Assembly: GCA_044892505.1 (NCBI GenBank)
Contig: CM097882.1
Location: 289,912,001 to 289,976,000 of the forward strand
Length of the DNA stretch: 64,000 nt
From: Schmidtea nova
Lineage: Eukaryota
Direction of reading: 5' to 3'
This document shows, piece after piece, positions 2,686 through 63,206 of the stretch; position 1 is the stretch's first letter, and every line of letters starts with the position of its first letter. The notes beneath the pieces were generated by a model. It was not told the DNA's origin. It saw nothing but the letters and a program-made list of their open reading frames with translations, and did no database searches. Made by a program: the position numbers and the translations under genes.

Positions 2686-5600
2686 ATTTATAAAAGTAAT
2701 AGGTATCTAAAATCGAGAGGTTTCTCTTAAAATATGCTTCCTAATATATTGTAGAAAAAAATATCTTAACGCTTAACTATTTGAATGTGACAGCTGAATG
2801 ATTTTCACACAACTAAGCTTACTTGTTTTAGTTTGAAAACCGAAATCAATAAACTGAAAACGATATATTTAACCCTTACTTTACCGCAGGGGTCATTATA
2901 TGCCCCCAGCTATATTTATTTGTTTTCCGGCTTTTCGTAATTGGCTCTTATGAGGCTACAACTTAATGAATTTTTTCTACAGCCCTTGTGTTTTTATTTC
3001 TGTCAAAGTAAAGGTTTAACAAAAAAATATTTAATATTTACGCAAGTATTTTGTACGTAGCAGGCTGTGACTTTGTAACTGTACAGTAAAAAAATTCAGT
3101 GATTGAATAAAATAAAGTTAGACTTGATAACTTCTGTACACGCTTAAAATAAATCGTAAAATATTGCAATTGTAAGCAAAACATTGATATGATTACCATA
3201 AAAGTATATGAAAACAAATACAATAATATTAAAATCTTGTATCTTTTTAAAATAAATTTTAACGATATTTTTTCGGTCTTGGCTAGAGCCAAATTAATGA
3301 CGTAGGAGAGCCACAGTTTGACCAATTATGTTTTATAGTATCATAAAGGGAATATTGGACGATACTTTTTGTCAACTTACATGAACCACACTTTATCTTC
3401 ATCTTAAAGAAAATGCAGATTGACTAAACATGACAAACATGCTTAAAAACATTTTCAATAGTACAGAGAAACTGCTTTGGGTTTTGGTTCAAGTTTTTAC
3501 ATTTTCCAAATTAGATATGGTGAATTCCAATAGCATACAAGTATATAAGTAATTTACTATGTTATTTTTTATTGTCAGTAAAACGTCCTAAGTGTTTTTA
3601 TACATCTATGTAAGTTCTCAATTCACGAAATTTAGTGCAATAGAAATACCAATTACACAAAATCAAAGCCATTGTGTAGATATCTGAATGGATGTTTGTT
3701 GTATTATATAATTATTAGCTTTATATTATCCAACTTTGCTTGGGAAGGATTCAAATTCATTCTTTATTCATTATAATTGATTTTACATACTACCTCCACT
3801 TTCTGCAAAATCACAAATATGTATCTCTTTACTGAAATGTGGCAACTTATATAGCACACTTCTAGACTTTTGAAGTAATAAAGTGGGCCATATAACAAAT
3901 ATATATATATAGATATATATAGATATATTTTTTTAAATACACGACCACGTAAAGAATTTATTAGAGAATTATTTATGATAATTGAAAGCTTATGTTGAAA
4001 GTTAGAAGCTTAATGAAAATATCACCATATACAGTACCTCGTGTAAATATACAAATTTAGTTACTAGTTGAAAACAGCATAGTTGATCTGGAAATAGTAA
4101 CCAGAATGACATGTGCAAATTCCCGTTTGGAAGGAGTTCTTTTGAAAAATAGATAGACACATGTATTTTCAGTTTTAATTATAGATTATTATGGAATGAA
4201 ATATTTATTTTAATGTTATCTGAAAAGCGATTTCTCTATCAAATGATGAGTAGTTTGTCCAATTTAACCAAATACTTCTTTTAAAACTGATAGACAATGT
4301 TAAATATTAGAAACTTAATTTAAAAAAATTTAACTTATTGACTTGAATAATTTCCCATAATAACCATAGTAATAAGTCATCCATATATAGAGGAAGAGGT
4401 GTGTTTAATATGGGATATTTTGCGTATGGGTGTGTAGAGTTTTTTAGAAGGGACTTTCTTAATGGGTTTTTCAAATTTCAGTTATGAAAATGTATTGACA
4501 TGGAAGATCTGGGAAACGTATATGTAAGGGTAAAGATTGGACAAATCCCGAGAATTAGGAATATCCATAAAAATAGAGAAAAATCCCGAGATTTTTTTCA
4601 TAAATAGTTCTATTTTTTTCTTAATTCATTTCACACGTTATTATAACATTAATCAAATCAATTTATTTATTGTTGAAAAAGTGACTCTTTAAAACATACA
4701 CTAATAATCTGGTTCGCCTTTTCGATACTAAATATCTTGAAATGGAAAATTTTCTTTTGTTTTCTGTGTTAGTTATTTGCATCTTACATAATGCTGATTA
4801 CAGTTTTTGTAAATTATCCGTTTTATTTTTCGGATGTTTTAGTGGGGGCACCTGGAGCCTTGGATTTTACCATTTGTTTATTCTCATTGGAGTAAATTAG
4901 ATCTATTAATAATCCTGGATAAAGCTCACTCATCTTAGATATTTAAATATAAAACAATTGTAAAAAATAAATCGCATATCTAAAATTATTTTAATAATTC
5001 AGTGATAGTTTAGAAAAACTTTTAAAATTAAAATTATTTATTTATTTAAATTCCAAATTATATCTTCATCTCATTTTTTTACCAACTGAAAATCATTTTT
5101 TAAAGCATATGCTTCAACACTGATCTTATTCGAATGAATCCACCGAACTGATCAGGTAAACTACTATTATTTTCTTGTTAAACAATTTCAACGTTATCCT
5201 CGACCTCACAGATCATACTATTAATCGCATAAAATTATTAAAAAAATATTTTCAAATATTATCCAATTACGGTATTTTATTTTATTTTTTTAAGTATTTA
5301 CGTAAAAGGGAGTGTATAATACACGTTTTTTATTCATTATACGCGTTATATTGATAGAAACATCTTTTTTCACGTATCATAGTAAATTCAAAAAAATTTG
5401 ACTGTCAGTTGACGGGCTTGTTTTATAACTAATATATAACTAATATATATATATATATATATTATCATAATTATCTTTTTTCACCTTTGATCTTTTTTTA
5501 TTATTATTATCAATAATTCTCATAATGACTATAGATCAAAATTTTTTTTTATAAACAATAACACAATATTTGTAATGAATTTTTGAATCCCTCTTGTAAT

Positions 5601-6149: not shown

Positions 6150-6740
6150 ATGGAAAAGCCACGTTCCACTTCAACGCAAAATCGGATTACTAATAAGAGA
6201 AAGTTAAAGAGCCATAGAAACTGTTCAAACGCAAACAAAATACAAGAAACATTAGAAAACTTCAAAATACGATTCCTCCAAAATGGATACGCTGAAGAAT
6301 TTGTAAAAAAATACTTCCTTAACGAACCATACCACAATAAACGCAACAATAAGAAACGCCAGAAGCACAATAACAATAACAAACACATAGCATATCTAAG
6401 ATTAATTTTCCTAAATGACACTACAGCCAATAAAATCACCAACATTTTTAACCAAACATATTTGCCAATCAACATCCGTCCTACTTTCATAAACTTTGTA
6501 CCGTTAAAATCACAAATCCGAAAGCCGCCAATTTCCAACATCTCCAAACATAAATGTCTTTGTCGTTCCACAACCCGATGCTTTTGCTTTTCCAAAAATA
6601 TAGTATATAAACTTTCTTGCCAAAAATGTGACGCTACTTACATAGGAGAAACACATAGAACTTTTCGCACCCGACTTAATGAACACACTAAAAACAAAAC
6701 CAGTAATTATTACGAACACTGGGAGAAAGTACATCTATAG
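6150..6740 (+). pseudogene. Penelope-type RT thumb and GIY-YIG endonuclease fragment
   Basis: NGY and NIVYKLSCQKCDATYIGETHRTFRTRLNEH motifs. Confidence 0.9.
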
Positions 6741-11220: not shown

Positions 11221-11717
11221 TTAACGGTTATGCAGAAGAACACGAAACCACAACCTATAGTTCTGATATGGTTGAGATGTGGTGTGAGTCCGCAATCAAT
11301 GAATTTAAGACCAGTTTCAAAACTGAGCCTGACAGTGTAATGAAAATTGGATCTGGAGAAGTTGTTACGGTTTGTCTATAAGTGTATTTATATTGAAAAA
11401 TTGTAACAACTCGTCATGTCCAGATACGGGTTCCGACCAGTGCAACAAATGATTATCTAGTCTGGCAATTTGTCACTGATGAATGTGATATCGGGTTTGG
11501 AGTGTCGGTTTCAAATGAGGTTTCAGGTCAGGCAAATACCACTGAAATTGTGCCAGTCTTGAGGCGTGATAGTCACAAACAAATATTCTGTGGCAAGATA
11601 AAACTTCATAAAAACTCCACTGGAAATGATCAGTTGTTCTTCCTTTTACGCTTCGATAATTCTTATTCTTTATGGCGTCACAAATGGCTCTATTATCGCG
11701 TTTGTTATTCTGATTAA
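11221..11717 (+). CDS. Last two exons (11221-11369 and 11424-11717; 54-bp GT-AG intron) of an ACBD3/GCP60/TMED8-type GOLD-domain protein; upstream exons not identified
   Basis: Spliced translation: ...MWCESAINEFKTSFKTEPDSVMKIGSGEVVT|IRVPT...LVWQFVTDECDIGFGV...EIVPVLRRDSH...LLRFDNSYSLWRHKWLYYRV. This matches the ACBD3/TMED8 C-terminal signature. AATAAA follows the stop. Confidence 0.85.
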
Positions 11718-13272
11718 CAATGTGCTTTCAATAAATGGGTTGTCTTTTTATTTTTATTCTAATAAATTTTTTATTTATTCATTAATAATTAATGTTTTCA
11801 ATTGAGGGTTTAGTCAGTGTTAATCCATTAAAATAACGGGGAAATAAAGAATCAGATAATTTATTATTTATTTTTAATTGGAGATTAGTCACTTATATTT
11901 ATAAGAAATTAATATCGAAATTCATAATTTAATCAAAAAATATACTATTTATAATAGTAAGTAGTTTAATTTAAGAAATAAATATATTGCGTTATAAAAA
12001 ACTTTGATTTTGACAATTTATGTAAAACAAAAATTAACGATCAACAATACTAATGAGTGCAATGCATCCATTCCTTGATTACATTATTTTCTGTAAATTC
12101 TGGATAACTGGATTTAATTATGTGCTACAATGCCCCGTATTTTTGGATATTTATTTGTCATTATCATTTTAAAAAGCCAAATTCTGAGATATATGTAGTT
12201 GTGAAAGTAATCTTAACCAAAATATCGCATTTATTAAATTTGATTACTCGTTAACTCTTTCACATTTTAAGTACCAATTTACTGAGACCGTTTTTTATTT
12301 ACTATTTTGTGCCCAAGCGGCGAACGATTTACACGCAACTGTTGTAACATGATTGTTTTGTTTGTAATATAATCTTCAAAAAAATGTGCCTTTCTTCATT
12401 TAAACAAATATTCAAAAACAAAGTTTGGGTACATCACGGAAATTTGATTGAAGATAAATTCTTTGGGGTAGCTACCTCAAGCAACATACGAAAAACAACC
12501 ATAATATTAGGTATTACAGTGAGAACTACCTCTTATGCTAAAAAGGTAAATATACCGTTCAAAAAAATTGTTTCTGAAACCTTTATGAATTAAGTCCTAG
12601 CTTAAAGATATGCAATAATATTAATTTAGTAAATATTGAAATAATGAAAGATGTTAATTAATAATTTATGTCAAATACACTATACCAGGGATTGCAAAAT
12701 TTTCAAGTCTCGTAAGAGACTTGTGTTGGGCCCGGTGAATCGCAAAACAATCTTAAAAAGATACAAATTAAACATAAAAATAAGAATAGAATTAAAGAAA
12801 ATAAATTACCAACCATCAATGAAAGACAAACAATCATCAAGCACGGAAAACCTGAAAGAAACAGCATAACAATACAAATAATAATAACAACACAGAACTT
12901 ACCGCTAGACCGAGATGAGAGAACTGTGTGATGAGTATTAAACCAACCAAGCGAAAATAAGACCTATCAAAATGTCCTCAAATAAAATAAGCACAGAAAA
13001 CAATAATTACCAATGAGCAATTGAAAACCACCGAGGCCTGAAATAGAAAGAATAATGAATAGCAAAATTACAATAAAATTACCGAAGCGAGAATGAAATT
13101 ATGAACGGAACAAATGCGGAGGTGGACCGCTCAGACAAGATGTAGAAACTAAATATAAAATAAAAATCACTGGAGCATAAATAAAAGAATAAACATCAAA
13201 CTCACCGGTCTAATAGAGAAAAGCACAACAATCAAAAATAAATGGCTAGAAAATAAACAACCGTGCTAAATT

Positions 13273-13443
13273 CTGATTGGCCAGAAGGCAAGGCCAAAAT
13301 AGTATAAATACAGCAGCGAAATCAGTATTGTCGTCATTATTTTTACCAAGTGTTACTTCACTAGTAAACTATCCTTCTTACTAGTTGTGAATCAGAATAC
13401 GATTGTAATTGAAGAATCTGAGTGAAATAAAAGGTACGTGAGT
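13273..13443 (+). promoter_or_regulatory. Pol II promoter and putative non-coding leader exon of unit A
   Basis: Inverted CCAAT (CTGATTGG, 13273), TATAAATA (13303), Inr-like TCATT (13334), and splice donors GTACGT (13434) / GTGAGT (13438). Confidence 0.6.
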
Positions 13444-14394
13444 TAGTTGTTATTGTTATTATTATTAACCCCTCATATTAAAATACATAAGTTTTGTCCC
13501 GAAGGTCAAACGATCTGACGGGATTCTCGGCCTCTCGGCACAATAAATTTTCATGCGAGGTGCTGATGCGGCGAGACTATAGGTGTTCTAACTAATTAGG
13601 AAGGGGAAGGGTGCACATAGCGTGTTCAAGTAATGGGTGAACAGAAGAGTTAAATCAGTACCCGCGAGGATGGATAGGTGGCCAGAGTTAAGGTCAAACC
13701 CAATCATTGTCAATGATAATAGATAACATAATAAATGCGAGAGTACGAGAGAAACCAGAATACTAAAGACTGAAGTCGATTCGTACAGCATTTAGGGATA
13801 GGAGTTCCCACTAAGTAGTCAACCCAGGGTCATGCTTTCCACAATAATAATTATCGTGTATGAATCCAAGCAACTACAAGACCTTCCCGATAAAAAAATC
13901 GACGAGCAAGTTGACCAAGGTTTGTTGAATGTTTACTGTATGATTGTTATGAAAATATGAGTGACTGATGATCAATGCGATATAGAGTTACGATCAGGCC
14001 TACAAAATAAGTAACATCTACGTTCTAGATCTGCGTGGTAGTAGTGTACAAATCACTAGTCAAGCCGATAGTAGTAGGAATGCGTAGAGTGGTTATAATC
14101 AAATACGACTGAATACTGTCATATGATCAGAATTTTGACAAAAATCTACAACAACTATGAGTAAACTCCACCAGGTAATAATCTTAAGAAAGAGTTTGTA
14201 TGATTAAAGCGAAAGCGTATGATGGGGTATGAATGAGGTATGGTGAAAAAATGCGTGCCACTGTTGACATGTGATGGAATGATGCGAGAAAGGTCTGACC
14301 CTTCAATTAATGCCTCTATAATTTAGAAAATGAAACACCAAAGAGTACAACGGCGGAATCTGACCCTTCAATTAATGCCTCTATAATTTAGAAA

Positions 14395-14958
14395 ATGAAA
14401 CACCAAAGAGTACAACGGCGGAATCACGCTATCCAAACATTGAATTTCGAAGATTCAAAACTCATTCCCACCGCCATAAAGCAGTCGGCCGAACGACACC
14501 TGAGAGCCTGGATGCGAGGCCACGTCGACCCAGCCACCCGAGGAACTATAGGGTCCTTCCAGTTAAGAGTGCGATGGGAAGGCGATCCGGAATGGGCACT
14601 ATTGTTACAGATGCCGAGTCGAGCCCGTAGCCGATGGTTTATACAGCTCGAGAACCTCCAAAGCCAACCCAAGTGGATATTAAGCGGCAATTCTATGACA
14701 GGTTCCGACTTCTACAAACTCGGATACATCCTAATGGATCAACCCCGATGTACCTACACGGGAGAAAGGCAACCCTACCTTCATGTACCAGGGAATGTAA
14801 ACGTAAAAACTCAGTTGGGGCCAGACGACGAAAGACTATGGGAAGTCTTTGCATATCAGGATCGGCTATGTTGGGACCCGTGCCCTGAGATCTACCAGTC
14901 AGACGGGAAAGGACGAGCGGACCGACAATTTAACCAAGACCTATTGGAGTTCTTCTGA
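14395..14958 (+). CDS. Unit A ORF1, 187-aa protein of unknown function
   Basis: Intact GC-richer ORF; acceptor TTTAG ends 4 nt before the ATG; AATAAA at 14998; homologous to decayed unit B ORF1. Confidence 0.7.
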   Translation: MKHQRVQRRNHAIQTLNFEDSKLIPTAIKQSAERHLRAWMRGHVDPATRGTIGSFQLRVRWEGDPEWALLLQMPSRARSRWFIQLENLQSQPKWILSGNSMTGSDFYKLGYILMDQPRCTYTGERQPYLHVPGNVNVKTQLGPDDERLWEVFAYQDRLCWDPCPEIYQSDGKGRADRQFNQDLLEFF

Positions 14959-15205
14959 AAAACTAGATGTGAAGGTGCCAGGAATTGTGATAAAATTAAT
15001 AAATAGCTGTACTAAGAACTCTTGTGTTTAATCTAGAGAGAATGATGCCAGGAGTGATGTTGATTATGAATGGGTGACTGTGTGATAAAGAGTAAAATGG
15101 AGTAAAGTGTCGTGAATACTAATGACATAACATTTGAGGGTAGAGGGGGGACATAAGACCGTAGATGAACCATAATACGATTGATCTTCGTTTCCTCCTT
15201 TTTAG

Positions 15206-15763
15206 ATGAATGCGAATAAAGATCGTGACTATAGAAAAGAGGCCAAGGAGTACAAGTTGCGAGTTAGGATTCTCGAGAGCAGACTACGGCAGCTAGGGGA
15301 GGAACATCAGCTGATGAAAACCACATGGTTTCATCTGGAACGAGTAAAGCTTATTCAACAAGCCAGGTTTAGAGCCAATCGAATTGCTGAGGAGCAAACT
15401 CGAGAAACTGCCGCCGTAAAGCTTGAATTTAACAACTATGTGAGGGCCTCCACCAAAGAATTCATAACGCAGCAGTTGCGGCCTCTCATCCGAGCCAGCA
15501 CTTTCAATCGCTGGATAGGGACCACCAACGTTTCTACGGGTATACAAACCGATATGGATTCGAGTTCCATGACGAATACTCCAATGAACATGTCTCAACT
15601 TGAGGGCTCCAAACGAACGAAGCGTCGGAATCGGTTAGGAGTGAAACGAAGACGAGAACGAAGAGAATATGCCGAGAGAGTCGGAATTGAGGCAGACTTT
15701 CTAAGTGGTCTTACCGAGAAACAATTGATCGCCGTAATAAATCCATCAGTGTTATTGAATTAA
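15206..15763 (+). CDS. Unit A ORF2, 185-aa coiled-coil protein with an Arg-rich (NLS or nucleic-acid-binding-like) C-terminus
   Basis: Intact ORF; polypyrimidine tract and AG directly before the ATG; AATAAA right after the stop; homologous to unit B ORF2. Confidence 0.72.
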   Translation: MNANKDRDYRKEAKEYKLRVRILESRLRQLGEEHQLMKTTWFHLERVKLIQQARFRANRIAEEQTRETAAVKLEFNNYVRASTKEFITQQLRPLIRASTFNRWIGTTNVSTGIQTDMDSSSMTNTPMNMSQLEGSKRTKRRNRLGVKRRRERREYAERVGIEADFLSGLTEKQLIAVINPSVLLN

Positions 15764-16299
15764 AAATAAATGTATACTAGTTAAATGGCTTGACTTGAAT
15801 GTTTGAGGTACGTATGTGAAATTTAATCCAAAGTTGATTAAGTGAAGCTGATTCATTTTGTGCTACAGGACACATCGAAATTGAACTCACCTTAGAGGAG
15901 ACAAAGAGAGCGAGTAAGAAGGGACCGAAATAAAACCACATAAACTTTCTAACGGTAGTGGTGGACCCGTGAATAAACAAGGGAATAGTAGCCGCAAGGT
16001 TGCTCACCTGCCTTGTCATTTCACAACGTTGATACAGTACTAACATGATGAGTAGTTAGGGATACATCATGGATGTCAGCGGGGAGATGTTTTTATGTTG
16101 GCGAGATCACCCTAAAGTATAAAATCAAATAGGATCTCAGTTGAACATCTAACTAACCCACCAGCACTTGGCTAGATTATTCCTCACGGTCTACTAGAAA
16201 AATTATTTAAATATCAAGAGTGCCTTTAACTTTAATCTGTTTATTTTATTTAAAAACAAACAAAATTGTAAGATATAAGTTTATATACCTACAAATAAC

Positions 16300-17200
16300 A
16301 CCAAACCTTGAAATTAACATAATATATAATTGAAATTAAAAATTCGTATTTATTGCTATGTGGACTAATATTTGGCACTGCGTGTTTGTAGCAAATTCTT
16401 CATATTTTGGCTCATAAGAGTTTATGGCGATTCACAACCATGATGCTAAAAGATAATCTGTTAAACGAGATGGATGTTTTCTCTTAATTGCATTCATTGA
16501 TGAGAAGGCTGATTCGCAAAGGTAGGGGGATGCAAAAATGCAGATAGATATCCTGCAACTCTTCGCAAATTAGGATATTTTTCTTGCGAAAGCAGACTCC
16601 AAAATTTACTTTCAGCTGTATCTATTGATTTATTGAACATTGTTTTTCAATGATATTGTTTCATCTTCGACGGATGATCCATTTGAATAAAAAAATCATT
16701 AATTTTGATAGCGATCTCTTCTGTATTGATAGAATCATTAAATGGGAATGACATGAAGGTAGCAATTTTTTCAATTTTAGAAAAATCTTTAAAATGTGTG
16801 CTGAATTCATTTAAGAAAGCAATTACCTGAGTAGCATATTGATCATAAACAATTTTTGGCACATGTTTGGATTCTTCTTCCATATTTTTGAAATGTTTCA
16901 AATCACTAATGTCGATTGACCTGCAAACATGAGGAGCTTTTCTTTAAACATGTTCCCTGCCGTTATCATATGAAATATAGATTTATGTTTCCCCTGAAGT
17001 TGTAAATGTAGCTTATCCAACTGTTCTGTAATGTTACAGAGACAATCAAGATCTAGTAATCAGTTTTTTTTCTTTCAATTATGGATATGACTCTTCTTTT
17101 GTAGCCAAGAAATCTTTTATTTCAGGTAAAAGATCTCTGAATCGCTTTAAAATTTTGGAAGACTTGGCCATCTTTCATCCGTGTGTAATTGTTCACTATA
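16300..17200 (-). pseudogene. Decayed hAT transposase C-terminus (dimerization domain)
   Basis: Minus strand reads FSTHFKDF, FWSLLSQEKYP and FASPYLCESAFSSMNAIK...RLTD. Confidence 0.8.
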
Positions 17201-17751
17201 TTCAATTTCATATTGCTTAAGTAAAGTTCGAAACTGGCGCCGTTGTAGGCTTCTTCCACAGATGAAATTACAAACTTATTGAAAAAAGGATAAAAATATG
17301 GCAAACTCTGAGATGAAATGACATTGATAAGTTCATGGGTGGGTTCTTGAAATTTAACTTTTGTGTATTATAGATCCTTCATCCATAACCTTACATTAAC
17401 GAACTGTCACACTCGTATGCCCCTAACTATTCCCTAACTAGCTAGGTTGGAACTGCATACGGTGGCGGAAAAATGATGGACAGGCGAGCTTTGTCACCAA
17501 AACTTCTCTCCATTTATTTTCCTCAACAAGTCCGTGCTGCCGATGGAAGGTCTTACGCTATCATTCTCTAATTTCAGTCCTCTCGATACCTAATTAGCCA
17601 ATTTTATTCTTGTCTAATGCTATTAACAAATTCTTAATCTTGGTTGTCAATAACTACCTCAACCACTCCCATCCTTACTTTACAACCAAAATTCATTACG
17701 ACACGAAAAATAACTCAACACGAAGGGTTTTGGCTAATGATTTTATTTACA

Positions 17752-18307
17752 TTAAATTAACATGATTTCATTTAAAAGGTCCAGCTCTGATAGTTCATTG
17801 GGATGGTCCACTTGGGTAGCTAGTTGTCAGACGAAATCTCGTTTATGCCGCCTTTGCTTTGGACCTAATCGTCTTTTTCTGGAGCAGCCAAATAGGTTTA
17901 TTAATGGACTTGGCAGTGGCTGGATGGAAGCCTGTGGTGTAGGTACTAGGACTTTGCAATCAGTTCCAACAGAGATATATTTTGTCTCTTTGGCCGTCCA
18001 CCTTTGGGCCGTGATTGGTCTAATAAGGGCCCTGAGCTCCGTGTCAATGAATTATTTTGTTACTGCATTTAGGCAGTTTCGGAGTTCCAGCTGCACTGCG
18101 TCTAGTTCGGTATTGGTTTCTGTTAGCGACCCTTGCACTCTAGTCGTTTTCATTATTTGATCTTTCATTTTCTCTGGGGGGAAACCATTTTAGTTTTAAC
18201 TCATCATTAGCAGTTGTGAGACGCTTGATTTGGCGCTGCAATTCTCTAATTTGCCGATCTTGCCTTTGTTTTGTAAATTTATCCGAGAATTTCGTTCCAA
18301 TCATCAT
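17752..18307 (-). pseudogene. Unit B ORF2 (one frameshift, two stops), homologue of ORF 15206-15763
   Basis: Reconstruction: ...ELKLKWFP/EKMK...ELDAVQLELRNCLNAVTK*FIDTELRALIRPITAQRW...RKRRLGPKQRRHKRDF...ELSELDLLNEI. Confidence 0.75.
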
Positions 18308-18447
18308 TAAATTTCTACACCAAATACAGAAACACATTTAATTATTACTTAGACTTATTTGAAATAAAGTAAATTCGCATACAATTATAAATTTTAATGA
18401 AGCCAAAAAGAAAAAACATAAGTGGGCAATACATTTATTAAAGGATT

Positions 18448-18969
18448 AGTCAATCGACACCGAGTTTATCTCGATTTGAAAAAAATCGAGTGGATCTGCA
18501 TGGCCATTCTAATGGGACTGAGTGGGTTCACTAAAGTCGCCGAAGATTTCCTCTGGGCATCTCGTAGCGGTCGGATGACCGTGGTGAAAATTAAACCTAT
18601 CTCCTTTAGAGTTGAAGCTGGGATGAAGCCACAATAGATCATTGATTTTTGGAATCCGTCGTTGTCTAGGAGCAGAACAAACTAGTCTGCATACCCCGGT
18701 TTATACTCCTCGCCGATAATGATCGGCCAACTGGGGTAGCCACGGTACCACACATGATGTCGTGGGTGATCCCACACCATGAATGGGCAGGCGGTATCCA
18801 ACTCTTGTCTCCACTGACACATTTTTTGACGTACTTGCTGTAACACCTCGAAGGGTAGGAGTTTCAGCGGGCTTAGACATAGTTTTCTCCGGACACATTT
18901 TCCATCTTTTCGACCCCTGCGACTTGCAGCTGGTTTTTGGTAAATATCATTCTTTCGGGTCACTTTCAT
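18448..18969 (-). pseudogene. Unit B ORF1 (stops and a frameshift), homologue of ORF 14395-14958
   Basis: Motif pairs B/A: KLLP/KLIP, VWYRGYPSW/VRWEGDPEW, *FVLLDN/WFIQLEN, CPEEI/CPEI, DPLDFF/DLLEFF. Confidence 0.7.
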
Positions 18970-19454
18970 TATTGTCTGAAATAGTTTATAATATTTAAAT
19001 CCTTATTTGAATTATTTCTCTCATCGACTCTGATAGCCCATTCCTACATAACACTACTCTGCGCGCAAACTCTGACTAACAATACTTTCTAGGTTGCAAC
19101 AAAAACGGGTTTAATCTCTGGGGTAATAAAATGTCTTGTCTTACTACTCGGTTTGTTGATCATCAATCCTCCTTAATTAAATATGTTACGCGTGAAAATT
19201 AAAATAGTCAATAAAACATGGAGAATGACATAATTTTTAAAAATTAGTAAAACAGGTAAAAATTAAGACAAACGGAGTTAAAATGACATAATATGAAAAT
19301 TTAAAAACTAAGTACTAAATTTTTGGGAAATCTCGGAATAGTTAAAATTTAAATTATTTTAAAGTAAAATTAATTTATTATGAAATAAAATTTTTAACTA
19401 AATATTTCAAAATACAACATTTATATTTATTTAATAAATTTTTTAACAAAATCA

Positions 19455-19489
<35 letters not shown>

Positions 19490-20339
19490 CTATCCATCAA
19501 ACTACCACTATCAATCTAAGTACCAACAATAAACCGATCAACTAACTAATAATTTCATTACACACACAAATAATCAATCGACTAGTTACTTATCCGTTAC
19601 CAACTGACTCTATGTATTAACCAAATAAGAAAATTGTTTCATGCGTCAATCAATTATCTCTTTCTATTAACTAGATATCAACTAATCAAATCCCTTCAGT
19701 TAACAAATAAACCAAGTACTTACTTACCAAATAGTCCTACATACCAACCAGCTAGTTATATACACCAACCAATTGGTTCTATTCATTATTCCTATACCAA
19801 CCAACCAAGTACACTAACCAACTACCTAACTATTCATACTAACCAGCAACCAATTCTTTACTTACCAACTACTTCTTCACATCAACCAACTAACTCTATT
19901 CACAAATCAACAACAAACTAGTTACTGATCAAATACCAACTGATTCTATCCACACTCAACTAGTTAAATCAACTAATTGGATACCAACTGATTCTATATA
20001 TCAAACAAATAAATCTTCACTCTAAGAAAATTGTTCCACGTATCAATTATCTCTTCCCATTAACTAGATATAAAATAGGTCAATCTACAAACATATTCTG
20101 TCTTAATAAGTTTCAACCAACTAATTGCAATGAATCAACTAGATATTCTCTGAATTTACTGTCATGTATTACAAAGCTTTAGAAATCTATCATAAAAGAG
20201 ATAATATTACTCACAAATCTGACAAAGTCAAAATTTTATAATCAGTAAATTTTGTAGGAAATTGATTTCAAATATCATGACAGAAGTTAATTTATTACTT
20301 CGAATAAAATAATTGAATTAATCTTAAGTTTATTTTTTT

Positions 20340-23300
20340 GAAGTTTCTTTTTAAAGTGAATGAGCTTATTTCATAGTGAAAATGTTTTGGCTTTTCCATT
20401 TACAATTCTCAATTTACCCTAGTAAAATCTTTTCATTAATGAGAATTCCACTGAAAAAGGCTCAATCATTGGATAAAATTCAATTGGTAATTACAGTGAA
20501 TGAGGATAAATTCAGTTGAGAAACTTCACAAAAAGATGGGAATTCTTAAAATTCATTGTATTCAAAGTCAATAAATTGAAAAGCTTTTAAAGACGAAAAT
20601 AAGACTTTGATGGGACATTCATTCGAATGATTAAGGAAAAAAGTTATTATTAAGGAAAATATAATTCAAATTGTTAGTTTCTGTAGTTGAAGATACACAG
20701 GGTAAATTCATTAATTCCACTGAAAAGAGGGAATTTCATTGAAAGTCGGATAGTCAATTGAAAATGAATTAATCTTTTGAGACAAACCATTGAAAAGTAG
20801 AAAACCATTCTGTTTTGACTTCAATAAATATTTTCACCCATTTACACAATATTTCAAAGATTATTTCCGATATTGTTATCCACTAGCAGAACCTCTAGTA
20901 GAACTTTTAGTAGTAGAACCTTTTTTATGATAGTTTTGTATACAAAGGTTTCATATTATATTTCCACATATACCAATATTGTTGCATTTTATTCAATTTT
21001 TATGCAGTAGTAGAACCTTTGTTATCAGAACCCTAGTATCAGAACCTTGTTATGAACAGAGTGAATTAATGAAAAAACTAGTTATTAATGAGTGATTTCA
21101 TCAAGAAAAGTGTATTGATCTGTGTGAATATATTGGAGATATTTGATTGGTTAATTCTTATAAGACTGAGTGAATTGAACTTTCTTTACATTGTGACAAT
21201 AAATTTTATCATTTCATTCAAAGTGAAAAAATTCTAAATAGAAAATGACAAAGTGAAATTTTATTGTAAATCGGTAAAATTGATTTGAAAATTTTATAGG
21301 GGGCATCAAAATGGTTAAATCTTTAAAGGGAAAATCTTTTAGAAAATATATTCATAAATTTACTAGAAAGTAATTTATTTAATAGTTGATTAATTCTAAA
21401 GGTTCGATTGAATCTAATACAAATAAGTATCCTGTTTGTGAATCGCCAATGTATATATCATTCAAATAAGGGGTAAAAATGAGAAAAATCGATTCAAAAG
21501 GAGTAATATTAGAAAAGAGTTAATTTCCATCTGGAAAAATCATTAAAAAGTGCGTTAATTCAAATGGGTTAAAGAAGTAAAAATGGTAAGTGTATTGAAA
21601 TAGGTTAATTCTATGAAAAAAGTGTGTTGATTAAATCAGGGGTTATCCATTAAAATGGGTAAAATCATTTAAACAGGGTTATTTCTTAGACAGGGTGAAT
21701 TCATTCGTGGTTATATTATCAAAGGTTGATTCATTTAGATCTACTAAAATAGTAATCTTCAAACTTTCCAATCATCAAAAATCAATGGATATATCATTCA
21801 AATAGGGATATATAATACAAATAGGGTAATTTATTAGTAATTGCTCGATTTTTTCATTGAGAAATATCATTCAAATGAAGCTACAAAGAGAGTAAATAAC
21901 TCTTAAATTATAAATTATTCCAAAAATGATGGAAATTCATTAAAAAGGGCACAATGAAAACTGAGTTAAATATTTAAATGTAGGTAATCAACCTGAAAGG
22001 TAATTTATTGGTAAATTTGTCCATTTCGGAAATATTTTGAATATGGGTGAATTTATCAATGAATAGGAAATAATGAGGATGAAATGAATAAAATGTAGGG
22101 AAATTCAATTTAAAAGTGTGAAATCAAAGAGTAAATAATAAGAATAGATTAGTATTTGTAAAAGGAAAATGCATTCAGTGGGAAAATATAAGTAACAAAA
22201 TATTATTCAAGCGGTATATATTGATTTAGAGAAATTTACAATGAATAATTAAAAGAAAATTTAATGGAAAATAGTGTGTTAAAATATTCAAGTTTTGGTT
22301 GCTAGATAACTAATGAATACTTTGGCAATAATACAAATCATAAGTTGAATTTAGATGAAAGAGATTAGCAAATTTCAAGCTTTTATCTATTAATTTCAAA
22401 TACTAATAAATTAAGGAGTTTTTTGAAGATTTAATTGCAGTGAGTATTTAAGGAAGGATTTAATGATGGTAAAGTATTTTCAAAATTTAGATACTTATGG
22501 CTTTTTATTTTCATTTAAAGTAATATTTTGTAATGAATGATTTAACTAATTATTATTGATTTTTGGTGAATTGTTTGTGATAACTTTGAATTGATATCCT
22601 TTTAATTAACGGTGTGAAGAATCAATTTGAACATTTAATAAGTATCTAGAAGTATTTTAATTAGAAATCAATAAAAGTTTATAAGTTTTGATCATTTTAA
22701 TATGTTTAACTAGTTATTAAGATTTTTATAATGATTTGGACAATGATTTCAATAGAGCTTTGTTTAAAAGTCATTTGTATTTTAAATATATTTTAAATGT
22801 TTACAACTTTATTTAAAAAAGATATAAATTTAGAAACATGGTTATGTGTACTCTTTTAAAAAATAATTATCAACTAAAATTAATTCAATTATTTATTCTA
22901 AGTAATAAATCAACTTTTATGTCATGATATTTAAAATCAATTAGTTTCCTGTCAAATATATTTTAAATTAACTTTGATTATAAAACTTTGACATTGAAAG
23001 ATTTTTAAGTAATATTATCTCTTTTATGATAATTTTCTAAAGACTTAATACATGACAGTAATTCCAGAGAATATCTGGTTAATTCATTGACAATTAGATA
23101 GTTGAAATTTGTTAATAGATATAATCTGTTAGATGTTGTTAAAACATCTTCGGTTAACTAAAATTCTAAAGTCATCCAAAATATTTATTTAAATAAAGAA
23201 AATGTTTGTCTCTTTGAAGATATTTAAACAATTTTTTACCCTTTTCATTACTTTTAAAATGTTATGTCATTTCAACTCAGAGTTTGCCATATTTTTACCC

Positions 23301-25840
23301 TTTTTTCATTAGGTTTTAAAAATTGTGTCATTCTTTTGTCTTTGTAAAATTTTCCATTCTTTATTGCCTATTTTTAATGAACCACGTGTTTATTACCCTT
23401 TTTTCTTAAATATTTATTTAAAATTTCAGTTCAAATATTCTAGAGTCCCTTTCTTGTCTGAAGAAATTGTGGGAGTTGAAAATTTTATTTAAAAATATTT
23501 CAATGTATTTTACTTGTTTAAAAGATTTACAAGTGTTTTTTATTTACCATTAAATCTATTTTTCAGTTTAAAATTACCAGAATCGCTTTTTGCCCTAGAT
23601 AAATCTGAGATAAGAAAATACAGTATAAAATACCATACTAAAATTCGTTATAGAAAAATATCTGACCATACTTACCATTAGAAAATACTGAGACCAAAGA
23701 TTACCATTCAAAAATATCAGGACGAAAAATTCCTATTCAAAAACTCAGAGCTCCTTTTTCGCCCTAGAAAAATCTGAGAGTTGAAAATCTTATTCAAAAT
23801 ATCAGGTCTGAAATATCCTATAGAAAGAACTGAGACCAAAATTCCCTATTCAAAAATCCAAGACCGAAATTCTCAATAAAAAATACTGAGAGTCCCTTTT
23901 TGCCCGAGAAAATTCTGGGTGTAGAAAATCCAATACAAAATATTAGGACCAAAGTTCCATATAAAAAATACTGAGACCGAAAAATCGTATTCAAAAGTAC
24001 TAGACCAAAATTCTCTGTTCAAAATACTGAGACCAGAAGATCCTAATTAAAAATACCAGACCAAAAATCCCTATTCAAAAACCCAGAGTCCCTTTTGCCC
24101 GAAAAAAGTCTCAGAGAAGAAAATCCTATACAAAATATCAGGACTAAAATTCCCTTTACAAAAGATCCGAGGTCAAAACATAGTGGCCTTCTAGATCACT
24201 TTTTTAAGGGGGTTCGGGGGTTGTGAGCTAGAGGGCCACTAACTACCTACTAGTGTGGCTAGTGCATGTGTTGGTATCATAGCAAGATCTATTTATAATT
24301 TAAAATAAAAAAATTATCTTCATTTAAAATAAATAATTTAATCAATACATAAGGTAAATATACACACTGACAGGCAGAAAGTACAAACAACTTGATTAGT
24401 TGATTTAGTTCTTTGAGAATGACACATCGATAATTTAAAAATATTGTTACGAAAAATGGTAACATGAAAATATTTTGGAAAATACGCGCATGCAGCCTTC
24501 GATAACTGAACGCATGGGCTACACATAGTGTCTGAACGACTGATGGTAGAGTTCAAGAAAAAAAGAGAAAACCCGACACATACGTCGAGATAAGGATGAA
24601 ACGATAGAAAAGAGGCATCTCAGAACAGAACACACAATTTGAGTGCAGATTGGATTTACATACGAAGGACCGCACTAGAATTTAATGGGAAAGACCATTG
24701 CTTGTATATTGAATACGAAAAGCATGATCAAAGAATAAAATCGGTATTAAAATAAAAAGAACAATTTATTAAAAGTGTAGGAAAATTTTCCATTGAAATA
24801 TCGTAAACATAACACAGATATGAATGAAAATAGAATTTAAATTAAATTTTATTGTTTTTATCAATCAGTTAACGCGCGCAGAAAGTGGATACACACATTA
24901 TTTAATAGAATTAAAAATAAATATTTAGAAAATAAATAAAATGAATTATAAAATTTAATTTACAAAAAATAAATAAATAATTCATTTATTAAATAAATAA
25001 TTTAAATTTAAATTTAAATAAATATATATAAATTAAATTACTAATGTTTCAATTTAATGAATGGAATGCGTGAGCAAGGGCATCATTTAGAAATAGTATA
25101 AATAGACGCCGAAAAATTATAACTATCACTTCTTTTTAATTTCTACTTTTGGAGTCGTCTGTTTTCATTCTACCAGCAATCACCAGTTTCGATTGATTTT
25201 ATTCAGTGGAGCGAAGCAAGCATGTAGGTTTTATTTTGTAAGGATTATGATGGTAACTATTACGCGGTAATTTGCAATTTGTTAATAAACTTTTGAGTTA
25301 TAATTTTGTTTTTGTTAAATATTATCATGCTCTATCAAATGATTCCCGATTAAAATGATTTAGAAGGGGCTTTGTTGGTTCACAAGCCGCGAGTCCCCAG
25401 TTGGTTGTAAGTGCTTGGACCCAATAGTCGGTTAGAATCTTCGTACCATCGTCTTATTTAATTTTATAGGATGGCGAGGGAAAAAGGAAATTAAAGGATG
25501 ATTATTCAGATGTTTTTCGGAATAAATAGATATGAATCTGAGATAGGATAAAGAGATAGAAAGTTAGGAATTAATAATGCGAAAGGGCCGTAAATATGAT
25601 ATGTGCATAAGTCCTTCTATCGGCAGCAGGAACTCGAAAGAGATAATATAGTGAGGAGTAGTTTTGGCAGCAAAGCTCACCTGCTCACCAGATTCTCGAA
25701 ACCGTGTACATTACTGTAATGCACAAAAATGGTGGATAACAATTGTCATTTTTATAATTTTTATATTATGTTGTTAGCACCGTCATTATTATGGTCGGTG
25801 CCCTCGCTGTCACCGAGGACCCCCTTGTGGTTTACTTGCA
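20340..25840 (+). mobile_element. Unit C: 3' portion of a large LTR-retrotransposon-like element (AT-rich internal region, repeat array, PPT, LTR-like segment 24222 to about 25840)
   Basis: G-rich tract AAGGGGGTTCGGGGG (24206-24220) then TGTGAG; TATAAATA at 25097 and Inr-like TCACT at 25126; ends near TTACTTGCA after two hairpins; homology to units A and B. Confidence 0.55.
23560..24180. repeat. Degenerate array of about 30-bp repeats immediately upstream of the PPT
   Basis: Recurring CCTATTCAAAAATACTGAGACCAAAAT-like units with periodic GAGTCCCTTTTTGCCC variants. Confidence 0.8.
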
Positions 25841-26068: not shown

Positions 26069-26715
26069 AAAATCGAACGAAAAAAAGAAATTATATCCCT
26101 ACAATAATTAATATCCTTACTAAAATTAAAGCTGAAGATTTCGGTTTCTCAAACCCTTACAGTCAATTAATTCCTTGTAATAGCTTTTTGCCTATTATAT
26201 ATCGAAAATAAAAAAGTTTATAAAGAAGATAAAACCCATTACAAAATCGAACGAAAGAAATTATATCACTACAATAATTAATATCCTAACAAAAGTTAAA
26301 GCTGAAGATTTCGATTTCTCAAACCTTTATATTCAATTAATTCCTTGTAAAAGCTTTTTGCCTATTATATATCGAAAATAAAAAAGTTTATAAAGAAGAT
26401 AAAACCCATTACAAAATCGAACGAAAGAAATTATATCACTACAATAATTAATATCCTTACAAAAGTTAAAGCTGAAGATTTCGATTTCTCAAACCTTTAT
26501 ATTCAATTAATTCCTTGTAAAAGCTTTTTGCCTATTATATATCGAAAATAAAAAAGTTTATAAAGAAGATAAAACCCATTACAAAATCGAACGAAAGAAA
26601 TTATATCCCTACAATAATTAATATCCTTACAAAAGTTAAAGCTGAAGATTTCGGTTTCTCAAACCCTTGCAGTCAATTAATTCCTTGTAATAGCTTTTTG
26701 CCAATTTAATATCGA
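26069..26715. repeat. Tandem repeat, 170-bp unit, about 3.8 copies
   Basis: ACAAAATCGAACGAAAG recurs at 26241, 26411 and 26581, with a variant at about 26069. Confidence 0.95.
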
Positions 26716-29246: not shown

Positions 29247-30955
29247 CAGTGAAACCTCGCTTAACGAGCACCTCTTATAACGAGAAATTCGCATAACGAG
29301 TAAAATAAATTGTAAAAAAACGACTCGCTTAACGAACGATTTTTCGCATAACGAGTGAAAGTCCTGGATTGTAAAAAAAATTAACGTAAACAAAAATTTA
29401 AAAACAAAAATATTTGCAGCATTCTTGTTATCATTATTTATGGATACATCAGTATGTGTTTACAATTGTTCCGCTAGCATCTTTTGCTTGTGATATAAAT
29501 TTTTACAAACCTGTGTTAATACAATGTTTTTTGTGATTTTTTTAGTATAAAGTTTATTAATTATTTGTGATTTTTATTGTAAAATTAATAAACCTTGCAA
29601 AATGTTGCCGAAAAAAAGTCGCAAGAAGACAGTCATAAGAGAATAAAAATAATCATAGAAACGAAGCATAAAATCATTGAAAATCGAGAACGGGGTGTGA
29701 GTGTAGCGGATCTTTCGCGCACATACGACCGGTCCACATCTACGATCTGTACTATCCTTAAAAACAAGGACAATATTATGGAGATAGATGCGTCAAAAGG
29801 AGTTACAAGAATATCTACGCAACGGTTGCGTGTTCTCGACGATGTTGAAAGGCTGCTTCTTATATGGATAAACGAGAAGCAATTACAAGGCGACACTATT
29901 AACGAGAACATCATTTGTGAGAAAGCAAAAATGATTTTCGACGACCTAGTAAAGAAGAAGCCAAGAATATCAACGGCCGAAGAAGAAGTATTTAAGGGAA
30001 GTCATGAGTGGTTCGAAAAATTTAAGAAAAGAACCGGCATCCACAGCGTTGTGAGGCATTGTGAAGCAGCAAGCTGCGACAAGAGGGCAGCAGAGAACTT
30101 CATCGGCGACTTCAAGAAGCTCATAGATTCTAATGGCTATCTGCCGCAAACAAATTTTTAATTGTGACGAGACGGGTCTTTTCTGGAAAAAGATATATTA
30201 CTTATATTACTGCAGAGGAGGATGCAATGCCCGGGCACAAGCCAATGAAAGACCGCCTCACGCTGCTTTTTTGTGCCAATGCAAGCGGCGATTTGAAAGT
30301 TAAATCGCTGCTTGTTTATCATTCTGAAACCCCACGAGCATTCAAAAAGTGTAAATTCCAAAAAAACAGGCTAAATGTGATGTGGAGGTCAAACAAAAAG
30401 GCGTGGGTGACAAGTAACCTTTTTACTGATTGGCTCAATAATGTGTTTGGTCCTTCTGTGAAAAAATATTTACTTCATATGAATCTGCCGTTACATTTCT
30501 TGCTTGTTATGGATAACGCAGTAGCTATGCGCGCTACAAATTTATTTAATGATAATGCTGTATTGCCTTTTCATCAAATTTTGAAGCGTCGCCAAAAACA
30601 AACGTCACTAGACAGCTTTTTAGTAAAAAAAAATTAGTTATGTATCATTACAACAAACTTATTATTTCGAATACTTTTTAATTTTTGTAAAATGAATTTG
30701 TATTACAGGTTGGTTTATTTCGCGACAGAAGGAAAGATCAAGATGATTTACCATCTTTAACAACATGATCATGTATATAATTTTCATTCAATAAATGTAT
30801 ATGTACATAAAATTTTTTGAGTATTTTTTTCGGTACGGAACGAATTATCGTATTTTTCATTAATTTATATGGGAAGCGTTGTTTCGCTTAACGAGTGTTT
30901 CGCTTTACGAGGAACATTCTGGAACGAATTATGCTCGTTATGCGAGGTTCCACTG
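29247..30955 (+). mobile_element. pogo/Tigger DNA transposon, internally deleted
   Basis: TIRs CAGTGAAACCTCGCTTAACGAGCA / TGCTCGTTATGCGAGGTTCCACTG with TA on both sides. Confidence 0.93.
29595..30637 (+). pseudogene. Tigger/CENP-B-like transposase (frameshifted; DDE domain truncated)
   Basis: HTH_psq/CENP-B HTH, FKGSHEWFEKFKKR, NCDETG across a frameshift, KDRLTLLFCANASGD, LLVMDNA. Confidence 0.92.
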
Positions 30956-35400: not shown

Positions 35401-35570
35401 AAATGCCCTTTGATTCCACATGTCCAACACTCTTGAGAGGGGCATTTATTTTTGAAATGTCCGGATTTTTCACATCCGTAGCAAGGTTTGACTTCTTTAC
35501 CTGGCGCAGAATCACTTCCTTTCACTGCAATTAGACCAGTGCAGCCGTTTTGTTCTGATATTAGAAGGTT
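32470..35570 (-). mobile_element. Decayed, 5'-truncated Ty3/Gypsy retrotransposon (gag knuckles, PR, RT, RH, IN, PPT, start of 3' LTR)
   Basis: Two CCHC knuckles (35328-35525), protease LVD(Y)GCSQT, RT RPVIDFRELN and YIDDI, RNase H WCDAS...NIAELDA, integrase LLMDNGPSF. GGGGAA|TGT at about 32553. Many frameshifts. Confidence 0.92.
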
Positions 35571-38498: not shown

Positions 38499-38708
38499 NN
38501 NNNNNNNNNNNNNNNNNNNNNNNNNNNNNNNNNNNNNNNNNNNNNNNNNNNNNNNNNNNNNNNNNNNNNNNNNNNNNNNNNNNNNNNNNNNNNNNNNNNN
38601 NNNNNNNNNNNNNNNNNNNNNNNNNNNNNNNNNNNNNNNNNNNNNNNNNNNNNNNNNNNNNNNNNNNNNNNNNNNNNNNNNNNNNNNNNNNNNNNNNNNN
38701 NNNNNNNN
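38499..38708. other. Assembly gap (210 N)
   Basis: Run of N. Confidence 1.
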
Positions 38709-63205: not shown

Positions 63206-63206
63206 A

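What the first reader, a model, noticed from the sequence alone, without database searches (positions are those of the whole stretch)
14395..18969. Conserved pair of orphan proteins shared by two highly diverged repeat units (A and B)
Seen by manual translation: ORF1(A) aligns with decayed ORF1(B) at KLIP/KLLP, W, VRWEGDPEW/VWYRGYPSW, WFIQLEN/*FVLLDN, CPE and DLLEFF/DPLDFF. ORF2(A) aligns with ORF2(B) over the coiled coil and at WF..E..K, AVKLE/AVQLE, TKEFI..QLRPLIR/TK*FI..ELRALIR, RW and RRNRLG.KRRR/RKRRLG.KQRR. Gene order is the same, and DNA similarity is weak while protein motifs are retained, which implies past purifying selection. I recognise neither protein. Inference: an undescribed two-gene module carried by a mobile-element family.
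Basis: partly seen in the sequence, partly recalled or inferred. Interest (0 to 1): 0.85.

Follow-up and report, generated by a model that had tools for sequence, protein, structure and literature searches.

The report
Diverged copies of orphan two-gene unit
Two neighbouring, very diverged copies (one intact, one broken) of a small two-gene unit with no detectable relatives in any database sit in transposon-rich animal DNA; the second gene is clearly conserved, the first only weakly, and it is not shown that the unit is mobile.

Summary
Unit A (+ strand) carries two intact ORFs: ORF1A at 14395-14958 (187 aa) and ORF2A at 15206-15763 (185 aa). Unit B (- strand, about 19185-17325) has the same order of genes, but both are broken. 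ORF2 homology is robust (tblastn E 5e-12, 32-33% identity, z 17-20 against shuffles). Codon positions 1, 2 and 3 are 52%, 55% and 32% identical, so the protein was under long purifying selection. ORF1 homology is weak. Only the N-terminal half beats shuffles (p about 0.003 in the syntenic zone). Neither protein has a relative in Pfam, PDB, 5.8 billion or 1.84 billion proteins, IMG/VR or JGI metagenomes. ORF2A is predicted as a 100-residue helix followed by an arginine-rich helix. ORF1A does not fold confidently. Both units are GC-rich, purine-skewed islands with acceptor-like sites before the ATGs and AATAAA just after ORF2. An ORF-less remnant (C, 25531-25760) shares the 3' region. No LTRs, TIRs, target duplications, poly(A) tail or enzyme domain were found. 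B and C look like an inverted segmental duplication. My best reading, at modest confidence, is cargo of a non-autonomous repeat or mobile unit. A lineage-specific host gene pair is nearly as likely.

The parts
13500..16200 (+). Unit A as a whole (approximate bounds): GC-rich, purine-skewed island holding both intact ORFs
   Evidence: GC jumps from 0.30 to 0.49 at 13500 and falls back to 0.30 after about 16100. AT skew is positive in all 13 windows of 200 nt. Bounds are set by composition only, because no terminal repeats or target duplication were found.
13297..13435 (+). Candidate TATA-like box and leader ending in a strong donor-like site. It is uncertain whether this belongs to unit A.
   Evidence: Read directly from the sequence. 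The 14-mer at 13297 recurs only at 25091, next to remnant C (2 hits, 0.3 expected). The leaders themselves are not significantly similar.
14294..14423 (+). Perfect 65-bp tandem duplication spanning the acceptor-like site, the ATG and the first 10 codons of ORF1A. The upstream copy makes a short upstream ORF.
   Evidence: 2.0 copies, 100% identical. tblastn picks up the duplicated start.
14395..14958 (+). ORF1A, 187 aa, intact; orphan protein of unknown fold
   Evidence: There are no Pfam or PDB hits. AlphaFold2 gives pLDDT 37.7. GC3 is 0.53 against 0.34 in the host exon. A stop-free run of this length is rare in shuffles.
14959..15205 (+). Spacer between the cistrons, with AATAAA at 14998 and a pyrimidine tract plus AG directly abutting the ORF2A ATG
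   Evidence: Stop density is 0.10-0.16 in all three frames.
15206..15763 (+). ORF2A, 185 aa, intact: a long helix (aa 2-103), a disordered linker, an arginine/lysine-rich helix (aa 143-167) and a short helical tail
   Evidence: pLDDT 72.5; 77-96 over the long helix. Homologous to unit B. No database relative.
15764..16200 (+). 3' region of unit A: AATAAA 2 nt after the stop and again at 15972, 24 nt before a motif (GCTCRCCTGYY, 16002-16012) shared with B and C
   Evidence: Similarity to the B and C 3' regions is detectable only with permissive scoring (z 4-5). It is not found by blastn or nhmmer.
17325..19185 (-). Unit B as a whole (approximate bounds): a decayed copy with the same gene order, bounded on both sides by R-type repeat sequence
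18400..18969 (-). ORF1B-like gene, broken. The N-terminal part is still open and weakly similar to ORF1A. The rest is unrecognisable, so there is at least one premature stop and further breaks cannot be counted.
17752..18337 (-). ORF2B-like gene, broken: at least one frameshift and two premature stops
   Evidence: AATAAA lies 5 nt after its last stop.
17325..17751 (-). 3' region of unit B, with AATAAA 23 nt before the shared motif (17489-17479)
25531..25760 (+). Remnant C: an ORF-less relative of the 3' region (65% identical to B over 185 bp; shared motif at 25675)
   Evidence: (E 5e-13). No ORF is present.

Best explanation
Unit A is an intact, compact two-cistron unit of about 2.7 kb. It belongs to a small family of repeated, compositionally foreign units in this genome. 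B is an anciently diverged copy that broke more recently, and C is a 3' remnant.

I read the family as a non-autonomous repeat or mobile unit whose cargo is the two orphan genes, with the copying enzymes supplied in trans.

Proposed working (inferred):
- The unit is transcribed on the purine-rich strand.
- Each ORF is served by an acceptor-like site directly upstream of its ATG and by a poly(A) signal downstream. The two proteins would then come from separately processed (alternatively spliced or trans-spliced) mRNAs.
- The ORF2 protein self-associates through its helix of about 100 residues. It binds nucleic acid, or enters the nucleus, through its conserved arginine-rich helix. In that it would work like the coat or chaperone proteins of retroelements.
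- ORF1 encodes a faster-evolving partner of unknown fold.

Shown: the ORFs are intact, ORF2 is homologous between A and B and was under purifying selection, the proteins are orphans, the units are compositional islands, and the signals exist.

Inferred: mobility, the mode of expression and the protein functions.
For: - Both ORFs are intact in A. The longest open run in shuffles averages 80 codons, with a 99th percentile of 141.
- ORF2 A-B homology gives z 17-20 and E 5e-12. Codon-position identity is 0.52/0.55/0.32 with saturated pS. Both lineages were therefore protein-coding for most of their divergence, and B carries only a few breaks.
- The antisense frames share nothing.
- Whole units, including about 900 nt of ORF-free upstream and about 400 nt of downstream sequence, are GC-rich (0.37-0.55 against 0.12-0.30 in the flanks). 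They are purine-skewed on the sense strand in both A and B.
- GC3 is 0.47-0.53, against 0.34 for the neighbouring host exon and 0.46 for the Tc1 element.
- A third, ORF-less copy of the 3' region exists.
- The setting is TE-dense: Tc1, a Penelope-like GIY-YIG ORF, pogo, Pao, Ty3/gypsy-type and Polinton elements.
- Acceptor-like sites lie 0-6 nt before three of the four ORF starts (base rate 7%). AATAAA lies 2 and 5 nt after the ORF2 stops in A and B.
- The ORF2A model is a long helix plus a basic helix. The basic segment is conserved in B.
Against: - No LTRs, TIRs, target-site duplication, poly(A) tail or any transposase, RT or integrase domain were found in or around the units.
- Only three related loci are seen, all within 12 kb. 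None lies in the other 50 kb of an equally TE-rich window.
- B and C share flanking R-type sequence on both sides, in the same order and at similar identity (65-79%). This fits an inverted segmental duplication better than two separate insertions.
- Similarity among the 3' regions continues past the poly(A) signals, which argues against simple retroposition of an mRNA.
- A-to-B/C similarity in the 3' region is weak. It is seen only with permissive scoring.
- The splice and poly(A) signals are sequence matches only.
Confidence: 0.4

Rival explanations
1. A is a lineage-specific host gene pair, arranged like a two-gene operon or a compact bicistronic locus. It was duplicated locally at the DNA level. 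A is the working copy, B a recently pseudogenised ancient paralogue and C a leftover of the duplicated segment. Nothing is mobile.
For: - The copies are clustered within 12 kb and absent from the rest of the window.
- B and C share flanks on both sides, like a segmental inverted duplication.
- Homology runs past the poly(A) signals.
- No transposon hallmarks were found.
- The layout is operon-like: a 247-nt spacer holding AATAAA, and an acceptor abutting the downstream ATG.
- The host has short introns (a candidate of about 53 nt before the last ACBD3-like exon).
- The Tc1 copy's nearest relative is from a trematode, a phylum with trans-splicing.
- ORF2 was under long purifying selection.
Against: - The whole units, non-coding parts included, are sharp GC-rich, strand-skewed islands unlike the host exon and its surroundings.
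- There is no other host gene for about 50 kb of TE debris.
- No homologue turned up in any annotated proteome among billions of proteins.
- A perfect 65-bp duplication has just added an upstream ORF to ORF1A, which suggests lax constraint.
Confidence: 0.3
2. The units are endogenous copies of part of a virus-like genome, carrying two small accessory or structural genes. Diverged lineages integrated independently or were duplicated after integration.
For: - The composition is foreign.
- Gene order is conserved despite saturated divergence.
- ORF2 has an oligomerisation helix plus an arginine-rich segment, an architecture common in viral nucleic-acid-binding proteins (own knowledge).
- The window also holds an ORF matching a viral fusion glycoprotein family and a Polinton-like element.
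Against: - There is no sequence or fold match to any viral protein: Pfam, IMG/VR, BFVD Foldseek with all E > 3, and the large protein libraries, which include metatranscriptomes.
- No polymerase or capsid gene is adjacent.
- The glycoprotein-like ORF is 30 kb away and unrelated by tblastn.
Confidence: 0.08
3. Only ORF2 is a conserved gene. The ORF1 A-B likeness is chance, so there is no conserved pair. ORF1A would then be a young or unrelated ORF upstream of ORF2A.
For: - ORF1A against B gives E 0.03-0.08 even in a 2-kb search space, and about 2-3 equally good hits would be expected in the whole window.
- The second half of ORF1A shows nothing (p 0.84-0.91).
- The AlphaFold2 model of ORF1A is unconfident.
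Against: - The best ORF1A hit in B is exactly where synteny predicts: same strand, upstream of ORF2B, starting near an ATG preceded by an acceptor-like site. It gives z about 4 for the N-terminal half.
- That zone of B keeps coding-like GC (0.46) and a long open frame.
- ORF1A itself is a 187-codon open frame with GC3 of 0.53.
Confidence: 0.15

Closest known systems
LINE-1-type ORF1p (coiled-coil, RNA-binding chaperone of non-LTR retrotransposons; PMC10202459 for the homotrimeric RNA-binding description)
   Same: ORF2A has a long N-terminal helix with heptad-like spacing, followed by a basic nucleic-acid-binding-type segment. The unit is bicistronic with a short spacer and an ORF-free upstream region of about 0.9 kb, and its sense strand is purine-rich.
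   Different: There is no Transposase_22, RRM or CTD match. The basic/coiled-coil protein is the second cistron, not the first. No RT or endonuclease ORF, poly(A) tail or target duplication was found. Similarity between copies runs past the poly(A) signals.
Structural-protein-only, non-autonomous retroelements (for example Drosophila HeT-A and mammalian HAL1; own knowledge)
   Same: The elements encode only a structural or chaperone-type protein and depend on enzymes supplied in trans. Copies are often incomplete.
   Different: Those proteins are recognisable Gag or ORF1p relatives, and the elements end in A-tails. Here neither holds, and mobility itself is unproven.
SL-trans-spliced operons of nematodes and flatworms (own knowledge)
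   Same: Two same-strand genes lie 247 nt apart. AATAAA for the upstream gene sits in the spacer. A pyrimidine tract plus AG abuts the downstream ATG, and each ATG lies 0-6 nt from an acceptor-like site.
   Different: No transcript evidence is available and the host phylum is not established. The units are compositional islands in TE debris rather than part of a gene-dense region.
Taxonomically restricted (orphan) gene families with local duplicates and pseudogenes
   Same: There is no homologue outside the genome. The copies are clustered and diverged, one is decayed, and one member shows purifying selection.
   Different: Here two unrelated ORFs are kept together as a unit, and the whole unit differs in composition from its surroundings.

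Membership tests
Non-LTR retrotransposon (LINE-like) / L1 ORF1p | ORF1p-type domain (Transposase_22: RRM plus CTD) after a coiled coil | tested here: not met
   Pfam gave no hit for ORF1A or ORF2A at E <= 1, apart from a chance-level DUF7849 match. A long helix is predicted, but there is no RRM or CTD.
Non-LTR retrotransposon (LINE-like) / L1 ORF1p | Reverse transcriptase/endonuclease ORF in the same unit | tested here: not met
   There is no further ORF of 75 aa or more on the sense strand of 12700-16300 and no RT match in the units.
Non-LTR retrotransposon (LINE-like) / L1 ORF1p | 3' poly(A) or simple-repeat tail, target-site duplication, and 5'-truncated copies sharing the 3' end | tested here: inconclusive
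   No tail and no direct repeat of 10 nt or more flank A. B and C are shorter and share a 3' region, but their shared flanks suggest segmental duplication.
LTR retrotransposon / Gag | Flanking long terminal repeats | tested here: not met
   There are no direct repeats around A or B other than the 65-bp duplication.
LTR retrotransposon / Gag | Gag capsid or zinc-knuckle domain | tested here: not met
   Pfam, PDB sequence search and Foldseek all gave nothing.
Cut-and-paste DNA transposon | Terminal inverted repeats, target-site duplication and a transposase | tested here: not met
   The only inverted pairs are 20-41 nt long, 71-90% complementary, AT-rich or misplaced. No target duplication was found and no transposase domain.
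SL-type operon (host gene pair) | Same-strand genes 100-400 nt apart, a poly(A) signal in the spacer, and an acceptor just upstream of the downstream ATG | tested here: met
   The spacer is 247 nt with AATAAA at 14998, and the acceptor-like tract ends at 15205. These are sequence matches only.
SL-type operon (host gene pair) | Spliced-leader addition on the mRNAs, and a host that belongs to a trans-splicing phylum | not testable with these tools
   No transcript data are available. There is no SL RNA match in the window. The only host hint is that the Tc1 copy's best hit is from a trematode.
Endogenous viral element | Detectable sequence or fold similarity to a viral protein | tested here: not met
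Chromodomain (a lead for ORF1, from the conserved W..G.P..W segment) | Match to the Chromo profile or to solved chromodomains | tested here: not met
   There is no Pfam hit at E <= 1 (A) or <= 10 (B pieces). A profile of ORF1A plus ORF1B against PDB found no chromodomain. The window's Ty3/gypsy-type element offered no chromodomain to compare with.

The most novel reading that the evidence does not exclude
The units represent an undescribed kind of selfish element, or the relic of an unknown virus-like agent. Its only genes would be a coiled-coil/arginine-rich nucleic-acid-binding protein and a fast-evolving partner, unrelated to any known Gag, ORF1p, capsid or transposase. It would persist as diverged lineages within one genome.
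Probability: 0.15. Interest if true: 0.65.

Novelty: new member of a known kind. Interest (0 to 1): 0.38.

Why it matters
If the unit is mobile or virus-derived, its two proteins would define a new family of element-encoded proteins that current TE and virus classifiers cannot see. It would also show that a gene pair can stay linked through sequence-saturating divergence.

If it is a host gene pair, it is one more taxonomically restricted family, of local interest only.

Either way, ORF2 is a real, selected protein-coding gene that no database knows. It should be annotated rather than masked as anonymous repeat.

Tried and rejected
Searches that found nothing:
- Word-indexed searches of 5.8 billion proteins with ORF1A and ORF2A.
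- Full phmmer of ORF2A against 1.84 billion representatives. It returned only a 943-aa repetitive coiled-coil protein matching aa 13-41 in nine stretches, which I take as spurious.
- Exact look-ups of ORF1A, ORF2A and a Polinton ORF in the assemblies.
- IMG/VR and JGI metagenome scans with both proteins and with an A+B alignment.
- PDB sequence searches with single proteins and A+B profiles.
- Rfam at gathering and permissive thresholds, looking for hammerhead, SL or tRNA-like RNAs. Only chance-level matches came back.

Structure:
- The AlphaFold2 model of ORF1A is unusable (pLDDT 37.7).
- Foldseek of the ORF2A model against BFVD and PDB gave no match with E below 1. This is expected for a single long helix.

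Ideas considered and dropped:
- DUF7849 (E 0.089 with ORF2A) was rejected because no piece of B matches it.
- A chromodomain in ORF1 (see the membership test).
- LTR, TIR or Helitron-like ends (and reading).
- A conserved RNA structure in the 3' block. With three sequences, RNAalifold gives only -16 kcal/mol and has no statistical power.
- The antisense strand as the coding strand.
- An nhmmer profile of the B and C 3' regions does not find A.
- The decayed ORF between A and B (16260-17340, - strand) looked hAT-like to me by eye, but Pfam gives nothing.

The host species could not be identified.


Full report
**Setting.** The window is AT-rich (31.5% GC) animal DNA, not human-like.
- It holds the last exon of an ACBD3/GCP60-type gene. 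The GOLD domain at 11400-11717 matches solved ACBD3 chains at E about 3e-19, with a candidate intron of about 53 nt before it.
- Otherwise it is mostly transposon debris. There is Tc1 (1643-2449), a GIY-YIG ORF of Penelope type (6150-6740) and pogo (29595-30637). There is also a Pao-like element (33414-35445, - strand), a Ty3/gypsy-type element (55690-59082) and Polinton-like polB and double-jelly-roll genes (51882-53815).
- The nearest relative of the Tc1 copy is a trematode protein at 71% identity. The host species could not be identified.
- The N run at 38499-38708 was left alone.

**The observation.** ORF1A (14395-14958, 187 aa) and ORF2A (15206-15763, 185 aa) are intact on the + strand. 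In shuffles of this stretch the longest open run averages 80 codons, with a 99th percentile of 141. Two adjacent open frames of 185 codons or more on one strand are therefore not chance. Unit B lies on the - strand, tail to tail with A and 1.5 kb away.

**ORF2 homology is robust.**
- tblastn of ORF2A against the whole window finds only B. The match covers aa 63-175 against 18120-17773, with 33% identity over 119 columns and E 5e-12.
- One uninterrupted piece of B alone gives E 4e-9.
- Against shuffled queries, Smith-Waterman gives z 19.9 and a frameshift-tolerant alignment gives z 17.
- The N-terminal coiled-coil part is colinear but only marginal on its own (p 0.05-0.07).
- The B gene is broken by at least one frameshift and two premature stops.

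**ORF1 homology is weak.**
- The best hit of ORF1A in B is at the syntenic place (aa 22-71 against 18864-18715, - strand). It reaches only E 0.03-0.08 in very small search spaces.
- Restricted to the syntenic zone, the N-terminal half beats shuffles (p 0.004; none of 400 shuffles; z about 4).
- The C-terminal half does not (p 0.84-0.91).
- I regard ORF1 homology as probable for the N-terminal half, mainly because of its position, but not established.

**Selection.**
- There is no DNA-level similarity between the coding parts of A and B (blastn with word size 7).
- In the ORF2 alignment, nucleotide identity by codon position is 0.52, 0.55 and 0.32, against about 0.25 expected from composition. 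pS is 0.77 (saturated) and pN is 0.46. A dN/dS ratio cannot be computed because dS is saturated, but the pattern is that of long divergence under protein-level constraint.
- The antisense ORFs share nothing.
- B's few breaks against this saturated divergence mean that it stayed coding for most of its history.

**Orphan status.** Neither protein matches Pfam or PDB sequences, searched singly and as A+B profiles. Neither matches the 5.8-billion-protein index, IMG/VR or JGI metagenomes. ORF2A finds nothing real among 1.84 billion representatives. Each ORF, and each uninterrupted piece of B, was searched as it stands.

**Structure.**
- ORF1A folds with pLDDT 37.7, which is unusable.
- ORF2A has pLDDT 72.5. 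It is predicted as one helix over aa 2-103 (77-96), a disordered linker and a second helix over aa 143-167, which is the arginine/lysine-rich segment conserved in B.
- Foldseek finds nothing against BFVD or PDB.

**Anatomy of the units.**
- Both units are sharp compositional islands. Their GC is 0.37-0.55, against 0.12-0.30 in the flanks. The sense strand is purine-rich in coding and non-coding parts alike.
- GC3 of the ORFs is 0.47-0.53, against 0.34 in the host exon.
- A pyrimidine tract plus AG lies 0-6 nt before the ATG of ORF1A, ORF2A and ORF1B. The base rate for window ATGs is 7%.
- AATAAA follows the ORF2 stop by 2 nt in A and 5 nt in B. The chance of one within 50 nt is about 0.13. The A spacer holds one at 14998.
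- A second AATAAA lies 24 nt (A) and 23 nt (B) before a motif that occurs only three times in the window, in A, B and C.
- A perfect 65-bp tandem duplication (14294-14423) repeats the ORF1A start and creates a short upstream ORF.
- A TATA-like 14-mer and a donor-like site at 13297-13435 may be a promoter and leader. Whether they belong to the unit is uncertain.

**Other copies.**
- Remnant C (25531-25760) is 65% identical to B's 3' region over 185 bp (E 5e-13; z 10-22). It has no ORFs.
- A's 3' region resembles those of B and C only under permissive scoring (z 4-5). blastn and nhmmer do not find it.
- B and C are both preceded by an R-type sequence (20343-19185 against 22853-23415, 67-79% identical). 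Both are followed by the start of an R unit, in the same order and in inverted orientation. An inverted segmental duplication explains this more simply than two insertions.
- No LTRs, TIRs or target duplications were found.

**Interpretation.**
- Firm conclusions: there is an intact two-cistron unit, an ancient broken copy with the same order, strong conservation of ORF2 and no known relatives.
- For a foreign or mobile origin: the island composition, the strand skew, the TE-dense setting and the extra 3' remnant.
- Against it: the missing hallmarks, the tight clustering of all copies, the segmental-duplication pattern and homology that runs past the poly(A) signals.
- My probabilities are: cargo of a non-autonomous repeat or mobile unit 0.4, lineage-specific host gene pair (operon-like) 0.3, and virus-derived 0.08.
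- Functionally, ORF2 looks like a self-associating, nucleic-acid-binding or nuclear protein. It works like retroelement chaperones but fails every membership test for them. The function of ORF1 is unknown.

1. These were a chromodomain consensus, a hAT C-terminal motif and the arginine-rich tail of a hepadnaviral core protein. None was entered into a tool, a note or this report, and nothing rests on them.
2. One search printed the bounds of uninterrupted pieces of unit B so that they could be handed to tools by reference. Those bounds show where its frames are interrupted and are not repeated here.

Noticed in passing
14294-14423: A perfect 65-bp tandem duplication covers the acceptor-like site, the ATG and the first 10 codons of ORF1A. 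The upstream copy forms a short upstream ORF that ends just before the main ATG. It is either a very recent event or an assembly artefact.
   Followed up: partly
25531-25760 (also 25091-25104): An ORF-less remnant (C) is related to the 3' region of unit B, and weakly to that of A. About 440 nt upstream of it lies the same TATA-like 14-mer that sits about 1.1 kb upstream of ORF1A.
   Followed up: partly
19185-20343 versus 22853-23415; also 17272-17324: An R-type repeat (units of about 62 nt) flanks unit B on both sides and recurs inverted next to remnant C (67-92% identity). The B and C loci look like the arms of an inverted segmental duplication about 2.5 kb apart.
   Followed up: partly
16260-17340 (- strand): A decayed ORF of about 360 codons, in several frames, lies between units A and B. 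By eye its C-terminus resembles a hAT dimerisation motif, but Pfam finds nothing.
   Followed up: partly
11400-11717 (+): The last exon of a host ACBD3/GCP60-type gene (GOLD domain, PDB E about 3e-19). It is preceded by a candidate intron of about 53 nt. It is the only clear host gene in the window.
   Followed up: partly
48489-49088 (-): A 199-aa ORF matches the N-terminal part of the Pfam family of Monjiviricetes fusion glycoproteins (E 8e-8, above the family cut-off). It lies beside the Polinton-like polB and double-jelly-roll genes (51882-53815). It could be a captured fusogen or an endogenous viral fragment. It was noted only, and nothing was done with it.
   Followed up: no
1643-2449; 6150-6740; 29595-30637; 33414-35445; 55690-59082: Fragments or copies of Tc1 (71% identical to a Paragonimus protein), a Penelope-type GIY-YIG ORF, pogo, a Pao-like element and a Ty3/gypsy-type element (gag, protease, RT, integrase) fill most of the window.
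   Followed up: partly
23650-24080; 26084-26500; 19500-20090; 62525-63210: There are several tandem arrays. One has units of 28/56/141 nt between the R repeat and remnant C. One has 170-nt units at 95% identity. One is a CCAAC-rich array beside unit B. One is an array open in several frames on both strands at the window's end.
   Followed up: no
3041-3325 (-): A 95-aa open frame shows a sub-threshold match to a serpentine chemoreceptor family (Srsx, E 8e-4). It may be a remnant of a host GPCR gene, and it gives a weak hint about the host lineage.
   Followed up: partly
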